Of a stretch of DNA of 64,000 nt, positions 202-64,000 are shown one piece after another. The position numbers and the translations under genes were made by a program. How positions within the stretch are numbered: the stretch's first letter is position 1; each line of letters starts with the position of its first letter. The stretch comes from Heterodontus francisci (Eukaryota): positions 372,001 to 436,000 of the forward strand of contig NW_027142279.1 in the NCBI RefSeq assembly GCF_036365525.1, written 5' to 3'. Below the pieces are notes generated by a model. The model was not told the origin of the DNA. It was given only the letters and a program-made list of their open reading frames with translations, and did no database searches.

Positions 202-495
202 GAATACTCTCCTCCTATGTGGAACAGTCACCCTCTATCCTATCGATTGCAGCAGGAGAGTCGACAACACTCAGATGCACGCTGACCAATACTGACTATT
301 CCTATATGTACTGGTACAGACAACAACCAGACAGGGCACTGGAAGCTCTGTTCTATTCTGCTGGAACAGGGTCTGTTACCAATTACACGTCCGAGTCATT
401 TAAGGCAGTCAGAGCCAGCAATACACTGTTTACTTTTGCACTGAGAGACGCCGCTCCATCTCACACCGCTGTCTATTTCTGCGCTTGTAGTGTCG
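202..495 (+). CDS. TRBV: TCR beta-like V segment V1 (family A), V exon only; leader lies left of the window
   Basis: Acceptor CCACAG ends at 201. Open frame SYVEQSP..LRC..YMYWYRQ..HTAVYFCACS has both Cys and the Trp. Followed by a 23-RSS. Paralog of V10. Confidence 0.9.
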
Positions 496-534
496 CACAG
501 TGTTTGAGAAAGCGGATCAGCAGCTGCAAAAACC
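496..534 (+). other. 23-RSS of V1
   Basis: CACAGTG (496-502), 23 nt, GCAAAAACC (526-534). Confidence 0.95.
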
Positions 535-555
535 TGTCGTGGATGAACGGGAGTT

Positions 556-907
556 CAGTGCTCACCTTCCACTGGCAGGGGGCAGCAGTGGATTGAATCT
601 CAGTGCTCATCTTCCACCGGCAGGGGGCAGCAGTAGATTGAATTCAGCGCTCACCATCCACCGGCAGGGGGCAGCAGTGGATTGAATCTCGGTGCTCATC
701 TTCCACCGGCAGGGGGCAGCAGTAGATTGAATCTCAGTGCTCATCTTCCACCAGCAGGGGGCAGCAGTGGATTGAATCTCTGTGCTCATCTTCCACCGAC
801 AGGGGGCGGCAGTACATTGAATCTCAGTGCTCATCTTCCACCGACAGGGGGCGGCAGTACATTGAATCTCAGTGCTTATCTTCGACCGGCAGGGGGCAGC
901 AGTAGAC
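556..907 (+). repeat. 45-bp tandem repeat, about 8 units, each with a CTCF-consensus motif
   Basis: Unit CCACCRGCAGGGGGCAGCAGTRGATTGAATCTCAGTGCTCATCTT; 15-aa periodicity in the overlapping ORFs. Confidence 0.85.
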
Positions 908-1289
908 TGGCTGCTCAATTTCTGCAACCAGGTCATGGAATCATCTTGGTTAACAGCAGAGAAGGAGACCATTCGGCCCATCTTCCCCGTACTGGCTTAT
1001 TTGAAAGAACTGTCCAGTTATTGCTCTTCCCCCCACCCCCCCCCCGCTACTTCCCCATAGCCCTGCACATTGTTTCCATTCACGTGTACAATCCATTGCC
1101 TTTTGAACGTTCTTGTTCAAACTGCTTCCAACACCCTTTCAGACAGTGCTCGCCACATCATAACAACTCGCTGCTTAAATAAATCATCACTTCTCCCCCC
1201 CTCTCCCCATTAATTCATCTGCCAGTTATATTTAATCAATGTCTCTGGGTTGCCTTCTGCCTATAGAAACAGTTTCTGTCATTTACATA

Positions 1290-1862
1290 TTTTAAAAAAT
1301 TCTTTGATGGGATGTGTGCATCGCTGACCGGGCCAGCATCTGCTATCCATCCCAAATTGCCCTTGAGAAGGTGGTGGTGAGCTGCCTTCTTGAACCGCTG
1401 CAGTCCATGTCGGGTAGTTACAATCACAGTCCCGTAAGGAAGGGAGTTCCAGGATTTTGACCCAGTAACAGTGAAGGAACGGCGATATAGTTCCAAGTCA
1501 GGATGGTGTGTGACTTGGAGGGGAACCTGCAGGTGGTGGTGTTCCCATGCATCTGCTGTCCTTGTCCTTCTAGGTGATAGAGGTAGCGTGTTTGGAAGGT
1601 GTTGTCGAAGGAGCCTTTGGGAGTTGCTGCAGTGCATTTTGTATATAGTCCACAGTGCTACCACAGTGTGTCGGTGGTGGAGGGAGTGAATGTTTGTAGA
1701 TGGGGTGCCAATCAAGCGGGCTGTTTTGTTCTGGATGGTGTCGAGCTTCTTGAGTGTTGTTGGAGCTGCACTCATCCCGGTAAGTGGAGATTATTCCATC
1801 ACACTTCTGACTTGTGCCTTGAAGATGGTGGAAAAGCTTTGTAGAATCAGGAGATGAGGTAC
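1290..1862 (-). mobile_element. Non-LTR retrotransposon 3' fragment (CR1/L2-like ORF2 C-terminus)
   Basis: Minus ORF LKKLDTIQNKTARLI..LHHRHTV; same family recurs at 37630-38030. Confidence 0.7.
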
Positions 1863-1962
1863 TCAAGACTCAACGTGCTATCTGAGTGGGTAAAACTCTC
1901 CTCTCTGAGTTAGAAGGTGCCACTCCACAGACTGGAGCCAATAAAAAGGCTGACACTTCAGT

Positions 1963-60835: not shown

Positions 60836-61289
60836 ATGTATCTGTTACTGAATCTGATAGCGTTATTTCAATGTAAGGGATCTTTTCCTCACGTAACTGT
60901 TCGTGTTGACAATCACAACAGCGGCACAGTGGCGCAGTGGTTAGCACTGCAGCCTCACAGCTCCAGGGACCCGGGTTCGAATCTGGGTACTGCCTGTGTG
61001 GAGTTTGCAAGTTCTCCCTGTGTCTGTGTGGGTTTTCTCCGGGTGCTCCGGTTTCCTCCCACAAGCCAAAAGACTTGCAGGTTGATAGGTAAATTGGCCA
61101 TTATAAATTGTCACTAGTATAGGTAGGTGGTAGGGAAATATAGGAACAGGTGGGGATGTTTGGTAGGAATATGGGATTAGTGTAGGATTAGTATAAATGG
61201 GTGGTTGATGGTCGGCACAGACTCGGTGGGCCGAAGGGCCTGTTTCAGTGCTGTATCTCTAATCTAATCTAACATTTATCTTTCCGCAG
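60836..61289 (+). pseudogene. TRBV: Orphan V leader V15 (60836-60872, paralog of V7) with a SINE in its intron
   Basis: Identical leader MYLLLNLIALFQ|GTAAGG; acceptor TTCCGCAG ends at 61289. Confidence 0.7.
60921..61270 (+). mobile_element. Full-length V-SINE (HE1-like)
   Basis: A and B boxes, V-domain, CR1-like tail and (AATCT)n end; absent at the paralogous site near 23105. Confidence 0.9.
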
Positions 61290-61297
61290 TGCTCATT

Positions 61298-61508
61298 TCC
61301 CACTTTCAGGGGGAGCAGTAGATGGAGGTGCAGCTCTCATTGCCCACCAACAGAGGGCAGCAGTAGATGGAGTTGTAGCTCTCAGTGCCCACCAACAGGG
61401 AGCAGCAGTTGATGGAGGTGCAGCTCTCATTGCCCACCAACAGGGGGCAGCAGTAGATGGAGGTGCAGCTCTCATTGCCCACCAACAGGGGGTAGCTGTA
61501 GATGGGAT
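61298..61508 (+). repeat. 45-bp CTCF-motif repeat, about 5 units, paralog of 23135-23520
   Basis: Same unit. Confidence 0.85.
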
Positions 61509-62906
61509 TTCAGCAACAAGAACATGAAACGTCAGAAACCCTCAGTGCATCAGGCAGGATCTGCAGAGATAAAACAGAGTTACCGCTTCACATCAGAACC
61601 GGCAAACATGAGAAGCGCAATAGGTTTTGAGCAACTTAAATGAATGTTTGAGAGTGAAGGAATGCAAAAAAGGCAGTCTGTGATCGGGTGGGGTGGGGAG
61701 GGGAGGGACAGACAGAGAGATAGAGGGGGAAAGGGAGAGATAGAGAGGCAGAGAGAGAGAGAAAGGCAGAGAAAGAGACACATAGAGAGAGGAACACAGA
61801 GACAGAAACCCACAAAGATGGAGAGAGAGAGTCAGATAGACGGAAATCGAGTAATATAGTATTTGAAAAAGAGAGACAGAGTGAGGCAGAGAGACAGAGA
61901 TCGAGGGACTGCGAGAGACTGAGAGAGAGAGACAGACAGAGACAGAGAGAAAGGCAGAGAAAGAGATACATGGAGAGAGAAACACGGAGACAAATACCCA
62001 CAGAGACAGAGAGAGAGAGACAGATAGATGGAGATCGAGTAATATAGCGTTTGGAAAAGATAGACAGAGTGAGGTAGAGAGACAGAGATGGAGTGACTGA
62101 GAGACAGACAGAGAGAGAGAGAGAGAGGCAGAGAGAGAGAGAGAGACAGACAGAGAGGGAGAGAGAAAGTAGGCAGAGAGAGAAAGTAGACAGAGATAGA
62201 GTGAGATAGTTGACGCACAGAAAGAGAGACAGAGTGAGGTGGTGAGACAGATAGAGTGATAGAGAGAAAGAGCGAGAGGCAATCAGAGACAGTGAGAGAC
62301 TGGCAGCCAGAGCGAGAAAAAAGAACATTAGAGACAGGCAAAGAAATAGGAGGAAAAGGATAGAAAGAGTAAAGGGAGGAAGGAAAACAGAGAACAAGCC
62401 AAAGAGGCAGAGAGAGAGAGACAGGGACAGAGCGAGAGAGAAAGGAAGAGAGAGAGAGACTAACAGAGAGAGAGACAAACAGAGAAACAGAGGGAGGGAG
62501 AGACAGAGCGAGAGACAGATAGACAGAGAGAGACAGTAGACAGAGGCCGAGTAAAATAGTGTTAGGCACAGACAGACAGACAGATGTGGTAGTGAGTCAG
62601 ATGGAGAGACAGAGACATAGAGAGATACAGAGAGAGAGAGAGGCAGACAGAGACAGTGAGAGAATGAGAGGCAGAGAGAAGTGAGAACGTCAGAGACAGG
62701 CAAAGATAGAGAGAGAGAAAGGAGAGAAAGTGTAAAGTGAGGAAGGGAAACCGAGAACAAGACAAAGAGGCAGAGAGAGACAACGATGGAGAGAGAGAGA
62801 AAGAAAGAGAGAGAGAGAGAGAGCGACGCACAGAGAGACAGAGGTAGACAGAAAGAGAGAGGGAGCAGCGAGAGAGACAGAGGGAGGAAGAGAGAGAGAG
62901 AGAGAG

Positions 62907-62945
<39 letters not shown>

Positions 62946-64000
62946 CAGATAGATAGAGAGAGAGACAGTAGACAGAGATAGAGTCAGATAGTGTTAGGCA
63001 CAGAAACAGAGACAGTTGAGGTAGTGAGACAGATGGAGAGCCAGAGAGAAAGAAAGAAACAGACAGAGAGGCAGACAGAGACAGTGAGAGAGTGAGAGGC
63101 AGAGAGGAGAAGGAAGAACGCCAGAGACAGGCAAAGATAGAGAGAGAGAAAGGGAGAGAAAGAGTAAAGAGAACGAGGAAAACAGAACAAGTCAGAGAGT
63201 CAGAAAGAGAGATGGGGCAGAGAGAGAAAGTGGCAAAGAGTGAGAGGCAGACAGAGAGAGAGAGAGAGAGGGACAGAGGGAGAGCGAGACAAAGAGAAAG
63301 AGACAGAGAAAAAGAGATAGAGGCAGACTGAGAGTGAGAGAGNNNNNNNNNNNNNNNNNNNNNNNNNNNNNNNNNNNNNNNNNNNNNNNNNNNNNNNNNN
63401 NNNNNNNNNNNNNNNNNNNNNNNNNNNNNNNNNNNNNNNNNNNNNNNNNNNNNNNNNNNNNNNNNNNNNNNNNNNNNNNNNNNNNNNNNNNNAGAGTTGG
63501 AGAGAGGGGCAGACAGAGACAGTGACAGTCTAAGAGGCAGAGAGAAGAAAGAAGAACGTTAGAGACAAGAAAAGATAAAGAGAGACAGAAAGGGAGAGAA
63601 AGAGTAAAGGGATGAAGGGAAACAGAGAACAAGACAAAGAGGCAGAGAGAGTCAGAGAGAGAGAGACAAGGAGAGACAGAGAGAGAGTGGCAGACAGAGG
63701 AACAGAGGGAGGGAGGGAGGGAGAGAGAGAGCGATAGCAGACAGAGATCGAGTGAAATACGGTTAGGCCGAGAAAGAGAGACAGAGAGAGGGAGTGAGAC
63801 AGATGGAGAGACAGAGCGAAAGAGACAGACAGAGAGAGAGGCAGACAGAGACAGTGAGAGAGTGAGAGGCAGAGAGAAGAAGGAAGAACGTCAGAGACAG
63901 GCAAAGATAGAGAGATAGAGAGAAAGGGAGAGAAAGAGTAAAGGGAAACAGAGAACAAGACAAAGAGGCAGAGTGAGAGACAGGGACAGAGGGAGAGAGA

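What the first reader, a model, noticed from the sequence alone, without database searches (positions are those of the whole stretch)
202..64000. TCR-beta-like locus apparently built from tandem (V)n-D-J-C-enhancer cassettes
Seen: a single D, a single clear J, four C exons and an enhancer-like motif cluster (26.7-38.4 kb) are flanked on both sides by same-strand V genes. The downstream Vs repeat the upstream block collinearly up to the AG tract that precedes D. Established: TRB loci are normally translocons (a V array followed by D-J-C units), whereas cartilaginous-fish Ig genes are V-D-J-C miniloci and cassette organisation is known for some mammalian TRG loci. Inference: this is a multi-cassette, minilocus-like TRB arrangement with a unit of about 38-45 kb, and a second D-J-C should begin roughly 1 kb beyond the window end.
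Basis: partly seen in the sequence, partly recalled or inferred. Interest (0 to 1): 0.9.

Follow-up and report, generated by a model that had tools for sequence, protein, structure and literature searches.

The report
Duplicated shark TCR-beta cassette, dead core
In this stretch of a shark T-cell-receptor beta locus, a block of about 40 kb was copied in tandem, leaving a broken D-J-C gene set with same-direction V genes on both sides; this hints, but does not prove, that the locus grew by repeating whole V-D-J-C units.

Summary
Block 3-773 + 7250-25868 repeats collinearly at 44677-63956, with offsets of 44.7 kb and then about 38.2 kb (K2P 0.02-0.11). Eleven V exons with heptamer-spacer-nonamer signals all lie on the + strand, on both sides of one D, one J and a TRBC-type constant gene.

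C exon 1 has three frameshifts and a TAG stop. Contigs of another sample carry the same lesions, so they are not assembly noise. The J reads VGGR instead of FGXG, and the D has weak nonamers.

That sample also holds a second exon-1 version about 8% diverged, the same distance as the flanks of the two V blocks. RNA-like contigs show at least three further versions. So several C-beta copies exist, and the duplication probably carried D-J-C with it.

Only unchecked notes place a D-like element 1.7 kb past the window end. Private SINE insertions and divergence well above the between-individual level argue against alleles assembled in tandem.

The enhancer-like cluster is not statistically supported. 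First readers of this scan noted similar V-D-J-C repeats on other pieces of this genome.

Verdict: a real tandem repeat of a cassette-like unit, and a new variant of a known kind. Autonomous minilocus function is not shown.

The parts
3..25868 (+). Repeat copy A: V block (3-773 and 7250-25868), with 774-7249 present only in this copy
   Evidence: Self-blastn.
201..534 (+). V-a1 exon (201-495) plus 23-RSS (496-534). Open frame with Cys23, Trp41 and YFCACS.
   Evidence: V-set 6.9e-15; among single-V-domain PDB chains the best hits are TCR beta chains.
555..906 (+). 45-bp minisatellite, 7.8 units, each with a CTCF-like core CCACCRGCAGGGGGCAGCAG
3559..3907 (+). Pseudo-V-b, frameshifted, with a weak RSS; lies in the segment found only in copy A
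8328..8666 (+). V-c1 plus a perfect 23-RSS, but Trp41 is lost (YMYLNRQ)
10771..11104 (+). V-d1: open frame, RSS with a perfect nonamer but a 21-nt spacer (d2 has the same spacer)
11696..14331 (+). 13-bp G-rich minisatellite, about 200 units (partner at 50052-52732)
19127..19462 (+). V-e1 plus a perfect 23-RSS
20908..21078 (+). Decayed V remnant (partner at about 59127-59312)
   Evidence: short V-like match at 59236-59274.
21904..22250 (+). SINE-like insertion private to copy A; the site is empty in B at 60143/60145
23141..23518 (+). Second 45-bp minisatellite with CTCF-like motifs (8.4 units)
23712..26650 (+). AG-rich tract before D; holds three assembly gaps
26658..26738 (+). D segment GGAGGTCAGTATAG (26686-26699). 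5' signal: heptamer CATCGTG, 12-nt spacer, nonamer 5/9. 3' signal: heptamer CACCGTG, 23-nt spacer, nonamer 5/9.
   Evidence: read directly.
26938..27016 (+). J segment (26968-27016) reading NDPSTVGGRTRLAVLG, with a 12-RSS (GGTTTCAAT, 12 nt, CTCTGTG) and a GTACGT donor. The FGXG motif is lost.
   Evidence: Catshark model P0003 has YFGEGTRLTVL.
28732..30045 (+). 37-bp minisatellite (35 units) in the J-C intron
30305..30641 (+). Pseudo-TRBC exon 1 (Ig C1 domain). Frameshifts at about 30370-30374 (1 nt missing), in the G run at about 30440 (1 nt extra) and at about 30519 (1 nt extra). TAG stop at 30533-30535.
   Evidence: alignment to shark C-beta proteins P0003 and P0008; same lesions in contigs of another sample.
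32802..33940 (+). LINE reverse-transcriptase fragment in C intron 1
   Evidence: RVT_1, 5.5e-19.
34198..34215 (+). TRBC exon 2, 18 nt, (G)LCEGN with the hinge Cys; intact
34381..34493 (+). TRBC exon 3, VERIQRQQIVARATYTLLISKSFLYMAKITIVLLKGK, transmembrane with Lys; intact
   Evidence: 58-61% identical to P0003 and P0008.
34570..34587 (+). Candidate exon 4 (VFRHQ-stop) after a good acceptor; unverified
   Evidence: read directly. No match to the shark C-termini.
38277..38312 (.). E-box, GATA, RUNX and ETS motifs within 36 nt (GCAGCTGCACTCTGATAACCGCACATCCTG), 3.8 kb 3' of C exon 3; candidate enhancer core only
40547..40882 (+). V-f (d-like, intact) plus 23-RSS
41682..42020 (+). V-g (c-like, intact) plus a perfect 23-RSS
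44677..63956 (+). Repeat copy B of the V block. Holds V-a2 (44874-45168), V-c2 (46533-46832), pseudo-V-d2 (49123-49421, frameshift), V-e2 (57374-57670), a decayed V (about 59.2 kb), a private SINE (60916-61270), CTCF-motif arrays (45228-45447 and 61292-61505) and an AG tract that runs to the window end.

Best explanation
The window is part of a shark TCR-beta locus that expanded by tandem segmental duplication of a unit of about 38-45 kb. The unit holds V genes of several families, CTCF-motif minisatellites and a long AG tract. It then holds D, J, a four-exon-type TRBC, a possible 3' enhancer and two more V genes.

The window shows one whole unit and the V part of the next. The D-J-C of the whole unit is a relic. 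C exon 1 carries three frameshifts and a stop, J has lost FGXG, and the D nonamers are weak, so it cannot make a beta chain. One of its frameshifts appears to be shared with a copy about 8% diverged, so the constant gene may already have been broken when the unit was copied.

Most V genes are intact (7 clean, 2 doubtful, 2 broken). All point the same way. They would therefore have to join D-J-C clusters further downstream, by deletion that removes the relic.

Shown: the repeat, the gene segments, the lesions, and the existence of other C-beta copies. Inferred: that D-J-C was part of the copied unit, that a further cluster follows copy B, and how the V genes are used.
For: Collinear repeat with two divergence classes: K2P 0.023-0.034 over 10250-21903 and 0.06-0.11 in the flanks.

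Older duplicates V-f and V-g (83-88% identical to the d and c genes) lie in the same gap-free contig as C exons 2-3 and copy B.

Each copy has its own SINE-like insertion, with an empty site in the other copy.

The RSS geometry is V-23, 12-D-23, 12-J. The C exon layout is 337, 18 and 113 nt, with the hinge Cys in the 18-nt exon, and it aligns to shark C-beta models P0003, P0004 and P0008.

Lesions: the two Cys codons are 179 nt apart, which is not a multiple of 3, and TAG stands where the orthologues have Thr. About 2,400 nt of intact V reading frame shows that the assembly is not indel-ridden.

Contigs of sample S1 reproduce the lesioned version: 168 nt with 2 substitutions and no gaps, and 124 nt identical. 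They also show a second version with 18 substitutions in 217 nt, +C after 30370, -1 at 30440 and TAG changed to AGG. RNA-like run X1 covers only the exon and shows at least 3 variants, none with the window's first two lesions.
Against: Nothing beyond 64000 or before position 1 could be read, so a second D-J-C in tandem is not seen.

The diverged exon-1 copy could lie anywhere in the genome, or it could be a very old allele.

The D-J-C exon-1 contig (26392-31202) is joined to its neighbours only across gaps.

An unchecked note on the next window calls the cluster there 'inverted', which does not fit a simple head-to-tail repeat.

The second exon-1 version is itself out of frame (+G after 30551), so no intact sibling of this C was shown here.

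Depth could not be used, because only contigs were served.
Confidence: 0.6

Rival explanations
1. Only the V block was copied. A single old, dead D-J-C relic sits inside an ordinary V array, and a duplicate of the upstream V block was placed behind it. The locus is a normal translocon whose working D-J-C clusters lie far downstream.
For: The repeat seen inside the window covers V genes, minisatellites and the AG tract only. The D-J-C is dead. The frameshift shared with the diverged copy suggests the C was already dead when it was duplicated.
Against: Copy B follows copy A into the AG tract that leads directly to D, right up to the last letters of the window. A paralogous C exon 1 with flanking intron exists at the same divergence as the block flanks, about 8%. 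Unchecked notes place a D-like element 1.7 kb past the end.
Confidence: 0.22
2. Assembly artefact. Copies A and B are the two haplotypes of one V block, scaffolded one after the other around a unique D-J-C contig.
For: The assembly is a gapped draft with 12 gaps. Homology starts at the third base of the window, as if a contig began inside a repeat. The best block is 97.2% identical. The exon-1 stretch shows two DNA versions at similar contig depth, about 24 and 28.
Against: Divergence between A and B is 2.3-11%. The window differs from the closest contigs of another individual by only 0-1.2%. Each copy has a private SINE-like insertion, and A has a 6.5-kb segment holding an extra V. Older V duplicates in one gap-free contig show that tandem V duplication is real in this locus. 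Copy B is physically continuous with C exons 2-3, V-f and V-g in contig 32672-48478.
Confidence: 0.08
3. Working minilocus. Each (V)n-D-J-C-enhancer unit, this one included, rearranges and is expressed on its own, like shark Ig clusters.
For: V genes, D, J, C and an ETS/RUNX/GATA/E-box group lie in the order expected for a self-contained unit.
Against: This unit's C exon 1 has three frameshifts and a stop, confirmed in a second data set, and its J lacks FGXG. No RNA-like contig carries the first two lesions of this copy. The enhancer motifs are not above chance.
Confidence: 0.05

Closest known systems
Tetrapod TRB translocon with tandem D-J-C clusters (two in human and mouse, three in artiodactyls, five in axolotl; PMC2806336, PMC12529555)
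   Same: V genes with 23-RSS, D with 12/23 signals, J with 12-RSS. The TRBC exon pattern includes an 18-nt hinge exon. D-J-C units are multiplied by tandem duplication.
   Different: There the D-J-C units follow one another without V genes between them, and the only V downstream of C is inverted. Here six same-strand V genes follow the C, and the repeated unit includes V genes.
Salmonid TRB loci: two TRBV-D-J-C sets in opposite orientation per chromosome (PMC10464911)
   Same: More than one complete V-D-J-C set within one TRB region.
   Different: The salmonid sets face each other. Here the repeat is head-to-tail, at least for the V part, and the central set is dead.
Mammalian TRG cassette loci (mouse, ruminants; PMC7349638)
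   Same: Reiterated V-J-C cassettes produced by duplication of whole units. Some cassettes are pseudogenes.
   Different: A different chain without a D segment. Cassette usage there has been shown experimentally.
Cartilaginous-fish Ig miniclusters (V-D-D-J-C or V-J-C; PMC12227049, PMC6795676)
   Same: The same animals, and a repeated V-(D)-J-C unit as the building block.
   Different: Ig clusters have one V and are about 10-20 kb. This unit has 5-7 V genes and spans 38-45 kb. Reviews state that shark TCR genes are translocons (PMC6795676).

Membership tests
TCR beta (TRB) locus | V segments end in heptamer, 23-nt spacer and nonamer | tested here: met
   Of the 11 V exons, 8 have 23-nt spacers and nonamers matching 8-9 of 9. 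Pseudo-V-b has 22 nt, and d1 and d2 have 21 nt.
TCR beta (TRB) locus | D flanked by a 12-RSS on the 5' side and a 23-RSS on the 3' side; J with a 12-RSS | tested here: met
   The spacers are 12 and 23 nt around GGAGGTCAGTATAG, with good heptamers but 5/9 nonamers. J has a 12-nt spacer, a 6/7 heptamer and a 6/9 nonamer. TRD has the same geometry, so this alone does not separate beta from delta.
TCR beta (TRB) locus | J encodes FGXG | tested here: not met
   It reads VGGR. This is taken as decay of this copy, not as evidence against TRB.
TCR beta (TRB) locus | TRBC gene structure: Ig exon, 18-nt hinge exon with Cys, transmembrane exon with one conserved Lys, short last exon | tested here: met
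   The exons are 337, 18 and 113 nt, reading LCEGN and LLISKSFLY. The fourth exon is only a candidate. That an 18-nt exon 2 is typical of TRBC is from general knowledge (IMGT).
TCR beta (TRB) locus | V and C most similar to known beta chains | tested here: inconclusive
   Among single-V-domain PDB chains the best hits for V are TCR beta chains. C matches shark gene models that carry a YFGEGTRLTVL J, but their sources give them no name. The PDB ranking for C is swamped by multi-domain Ig chains.
Multi-cassette (cluster-type) antigen-receptor locus | Two or more complete V-(D)-J-C units in tandem | not testable with these tools
   Only one D-J-C lies in the window, and the flanks were unreachable. 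Indirect support comes from the extra C exon-1 versions.
Multi-cassette (cluster-type) antigen-receptor locus | Each unit can make a product; rearrangement stays mainly within a unit | tested here: not met
   The unit in the window has a pseudo-C and a non-canonical J. Usage within a unit cannot be tested without repertoire data.
Haplotype duplication artefact | The copies differ no more than alleles do and have no private structure | tested here: not met
   K2P between the copies is 0.023-0.11, against 0-1.2% between the window and another individual. There are private SINE-like insertions and a 6.5-kb indel. Read depth was not testable.

The most novel reading that the evidence does not exclude
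This shark's TCR-beta genes are organised as many head-to-tail (V)n-D-J-C(-enhancer) units, some alive and some dead, spread over several scaffolds. That would be an intermediate between the Ig minicluster and the TCR translocon. Its 1-2 J segments per unit would explain how many J-beta and several C-beta sequences arise.
Probability: 0.35. Interest if true: 0.7.

Novelty: new variant of a known kind. Interest (0 to 1): 0.5.

Why it matters
Reviews state that cartilaginous-fish TCR genes are translocons while their Ig genes are miniclusters (PMC6795676, PMC12227049). A TRB region in which V genes and D-J-C were copied together, with same-strand V genes behind a constant gene, would blur that contrast. 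It would show that cassette-wise growth also acted on a shark TCR locus, as in salmonid TRB and mammalian TRG.

It also gives concrete markers for annotation and repertoire work. There are copy-specific V genes, and a pseudo-C whose lesions tell it apart from its expressed siblings. The four same-oriented CTCF-motif arrays and the ETS/RUNX/GATA site can be tested for a role in locus folding.

The present evidence stops short of showing a second cassette or any cassette-restricted usage.

Tried and rejected
Nothing outside the window was read.
- The search for homologous proteins with a V exon gave one hit: a Chiloscyllium punctatum V-set protein, 60% identical. This genome's own proteins are not in that collection.
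- PDB searches with C pieces or with whale-shark P0008 cannot tell beta from Ig, because multi-domain Ig chains rank first.
- I looked for more J segments, and for an inverted J or C, on both strands of the whole window (regex for J, tblastn with shark C-beta). I found none. A J-like VGRGHLIIV at 27132 has no nonamer and no splice donor.
- A hinge 'DCG' in another frame of exon 3 looked like a further frameshift. I rejected it once the true 18-nt hinge exon was found at 34198.
- Enhancer test: the 600-nt windows starting at 37801-38001 rank first of about 630 for motif diversity. However, ETS-RUNX composites are 3 against 0.98 expected, so the cluster is not significant.
- Read depth as a copy-number test was not possible, because all runs laid were contigs.
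- The original horn-shark TCR paper (PNAS 1994) was not held under the id I tried from memory, nor was it found by search.
No N gap was filled or looked up.

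
Full report
WHAT THE WINDOW IS

The window is 64 kb at 47% G+C with 12 N gaps, all in non-coding low-complexity DNA. Earlier follow-ups of this scan call the genome horn shark. The organism is coded in the tools I used, and I did not verify the species. The nearest proteins are from other sharks: a Chiloscyllium V-set protein 60% identical to a V exon, and Scyliorhinus and Rhincodon C-region models.

THE REPEAT

Self-alignment shows one large direct repeat.

| Copy A | Copy B | Identity |
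|---|---|---|
| 3-773 | 44677-45447 | 91.6% |
| 7250-8973 | 45448-47178 | 91.8% |
| 9235-10183 | 47361-48478 | 89-93% |
| 10250-14331 | 48625-52715 | 92.9% |
| 14557-21903 | 52817-60143 | 97.2% |
| 22251-25868 (several blocks) | 60145-63956 | 75-92% |

- The offset is 44.67 kb at the left and about 38.2 kb afterwards, because 774-7249 exists only in copy A.
- K2P falls into two classes: 0.023-0.034 over 10250-21903, and 0.06-0.11 in both flanks. This fits an older duplication with later homogenisation of the centre, or two rounds of copying.
- Each copy has its own insertion of about 350 nt from one SINE-like family: A at 21904-22250 and B at 60916-61270. In each case the other copy has the empty site.
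- The unique middle also holds older copies. V-f with its flanks is 87-88% identical to the d genes, and V-g with its flanks is 84-87% identical to the c genes.

GAPS

Three gaps are bridged by gap-free collinear sequence in the other copy, with compatible spacing: 8974-9114, 14332-14556 and 48479-48624. The three gaps between V block A and D (25307-26391) lie in AG-rich tracts and cannot be checked this way. Neither can the four in C intron 1 (31203-32671). The contig holding D-J-C exon 1 (26392-31202) is therefore placed by scaffolding only. Order and strand are nevertheless what one gene would need: D, J, exon 1, then exons 2-3.

Contig 32672-48478 has no gap. It carries C exons 2 and 3 followed by V-f, V-g, V-a2 and V-c2 on the same strand. 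That is the firmest single fact behind 'V genes downstream of a C'.

GENE SEGMENTS

Eleven V exons end in CACAGTG plus a spacer plus an ACAAAAACC-like nonamer, all on the + strand.

- Nine are open reading frames and match Pfam V-set at 7e-8 to 5e-16.
- Among single-V-domain chains in the PDB, TCR beta chains are the best hits for V-a1 and V-d1. scFv and diabody constructs rank higher overall.
- Seven look usable: a1, e1, f, g, a2, c2, e2.
- c1 has lost Trp41.
- d1 has a 21-nt spacer.
- b and d2 are frameshifted.

D is GGAGGTCAGTATAG (26686-26699), between CATCGTG with a 12-nt spacer and CACCGTG with a 23-nt spacer. Both nonamers match only 5 of 9.

The only J in the window (26968-27016) has a 12-RSS and a GTACGT donor. 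It reads VGGRTRLAVL where shark J-beta has FGEGTRLTVL.

THE CONSTANT GENE

Aligned to catshark and whale-shark models, the constant gene has three exons:

- exon 1 at 30305-30641;
- an 18-nt hinge exon at 34198-34215, (G)LCEGN;
- a transmembrane exon at 34381-34493.

Exons 2 and 3 are intact. A fourth exon at 34570-34587 is only a guess.

THE C GENE IS DEAD

Exon 1 must be read in four pieces:

- frame 0: EADQEVKHPTMTVFEPSDEEIRA;
- frame 2: KKATFVCLTSGFFPDYVKFSWT;
- frame 0: GNEEIETKDVLTDRRVKDDAGRYSV;
- frame 1: TSRL*VPMAEWARKQYSCKVTHYSKDGAEISQDAKISSKAG.

The two canonical Cys codons are 179 nt apart, which is not a multiple of three. TAG (30533-35) stands where both orthologues have Thr.

This is not general assembly noise. 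About 2,400 nt of V reading frame elsewhere in the window is free of indels. Contigs of a different sample reproduce the lesioned sequence: 168 nt over 30303-30470 with two substitutions and no gap, and 124 nt over 30458-30581 identical.

With the non-canonical J and the weak D signals, the whole D-J-C is a relic.

OTHER C-BETA COPIES

The same DNA runs hold a second version of exon 1 and its intron flanks, with 18 substitutions in 217 nt (about 8%).

- It has +C after 30370 and lacks one base at 30440, which removes the window's first two frameshifts.
- It has AGG instead of the TAG stop.
- It has +G after 30551.
- It keeps the extra base near 30519, so it is still out of frame between the two Cys codons. 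This assumes that the unphased short contigs belong to one gene.

If so, one lesion is shared and predates the split of the two copies.

Run X1 covers only the exon and not the flanking intron, apart from repeats, which is the pattern of spliced RNA. The tool itself marks 'RNA' as a guess. X1 shows at least three variants. All have a base added at 30370 or 30373 and a base missing at 30440, and none carries the window's first two lesions. So several C-beta1-type genes exist and are transcribed. This copy was not detected in RNA.

The 8% distance of the second DNA version equals the distance between the flanks of copies A and B. That is what co-duplication of V block and D-J-C would give, but the location of that copy is unknown.

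THE ENHANCER-LIKE CLUSTER

At 38277-38312, 3.8 kb 3' of the transmembrane exon, an E-box (CAGCTG), a GATA site (TGATAA), a RUNX site (AACCGCA) and an ETS site (CATCCTG) lie within 36 nt. On the other strand this reads as an AGGATGTGCGGTTATCA ETS-RUNX-GATA composite.

The 600-nt windows starting at 37801-38001 rank first in the 64 kb for motif diversity. However, a generic ETS-RUNX composite occurs three times against 0.98 expected, P about 0.07. It is a reasonable candidate because of its position, and nothing more.

HOW IT MOST LIKELY WORKS

Same-strand V genes behind this C cannot reach its D by deletion or inversion, so they must serve a cluster further on. V genes in front of the relic could do the same by deleting it.

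By descent the region therefore looks like repeated V-D-J-C units. In function it is more likely a V array with at least one dead internal cluster than a set of autonomous miniloci. Collinearity predicts the next D about 0.8 kb past the window end. That figure is the 818 nt from 25868 to the D in copy A, added to 63956.

I could not read that region. Unchecked first-reader notes report a D-like element 1710 nt past the end and a D-J-J-C cluster there that they call inverted. They also report V-D-J-C repeats on other pieces of this genome. These are leads, not evidence.

WHAT IS KNOWN

- A review states that fish and shark TCR genes are translocons (PMC6795676).
- A 2025 study of elasmobranch antigen-receptor loci describes a translocon TCR alpha/delta and minicluster Ig (PMC12227049).
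- I found no paper in the library describing the genomic layout of a shark TRB.
- Precedents for multiplied units exist: five tandem D-J-C units in the axolotl (PMC12529555), two TRBV-D-J-C sets in opposite orientation in salmonids (PMC10464911), a translocated V-D-J-C copy in squamates (PMC11754216), and TRG cassettes in mammals (PMC7349638).

VERDICT

The repeat and the flanking V genes are real. The central cassette is a pseudogene set. A multi-cassette origin is likely (about 0.6) but unproven. Cassette-autonomous function is not supported for this unit.

It is a new variant of a known kind and of moderate interest.

Noticed in passing
window 555-906, 23141-23518, 45228-45447, 61292-61505: Four 45-bp minisatellites (5-8 units each) whose unit holds a CTCF-like core (CCACCRGCAGGGGGCAGCAG). 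All four have the same orientation on the + strand. Two start about 20-60 nt after the end of the RSS of V-a1 and V-a2, and two lie just before the AG tract that leads to D. An earlier follow-up described such an array on another piece of this genome.
   Followed up: partly
window 11696-14331 and 50052-52732: A 2.6-kb array of about 200 units of a 13-bp G-rich repeat (TGAGTGGGGTCAG) between V-d and V-e. It has extreme GC skew (+0.6) and is present in both copies.
   Followed up: no
window 23712-26650, 27170-28090, 30990-32800, 61596-64000: Kilobase-long AG/GA polypurine tracts stand before D, in the J-C intron and in C intron 1. Eight of the twelve assembly gaps fall in them. Such tracts can form triplex DNA and may be recombination-prone or hard to sequence.
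   Followed up: no
window 28732-30045: A 37-bp minisatellite of 35 units fills much of the J-C intron.
   Followed up: no
window 11068-11104 and 49422-49458: V-d1 and V-d2 share an RSS with a perfect heptamer and nonamer but a 21-nt spacer (2 nt short). The change predates the A/B duplication. The older relative V-f has 23 nt.
   Followed up: partly
window 30460-30596 (contigs of run X1 and X4): The only RNA-like contig laid over the 3' half of C exon 1 comes from a copy that shares the window's extra base near 30519 and adds another G after 30551. A second, transcribed C-beta pseudogene therefore probably exists.
   Followed up: partly
window 27100-27170: An open frame reads ESYYCVGRGHLIIVS. 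It looks like the end of a V (YYC) run into a J-like GxG motif, but it has no nonamer and no splice donor. It is probably chance.
   Followed up: partly
window 16470-18112 (-) with partner at 54716-56359, and 32802-33940 and 35443-36103 (+): LINE reverse-transcriptase fragments. One lies inside the 97%-identical core of the repeat. Others lie in C intron 1 and 3' of the C gene.
   Followed up: partly
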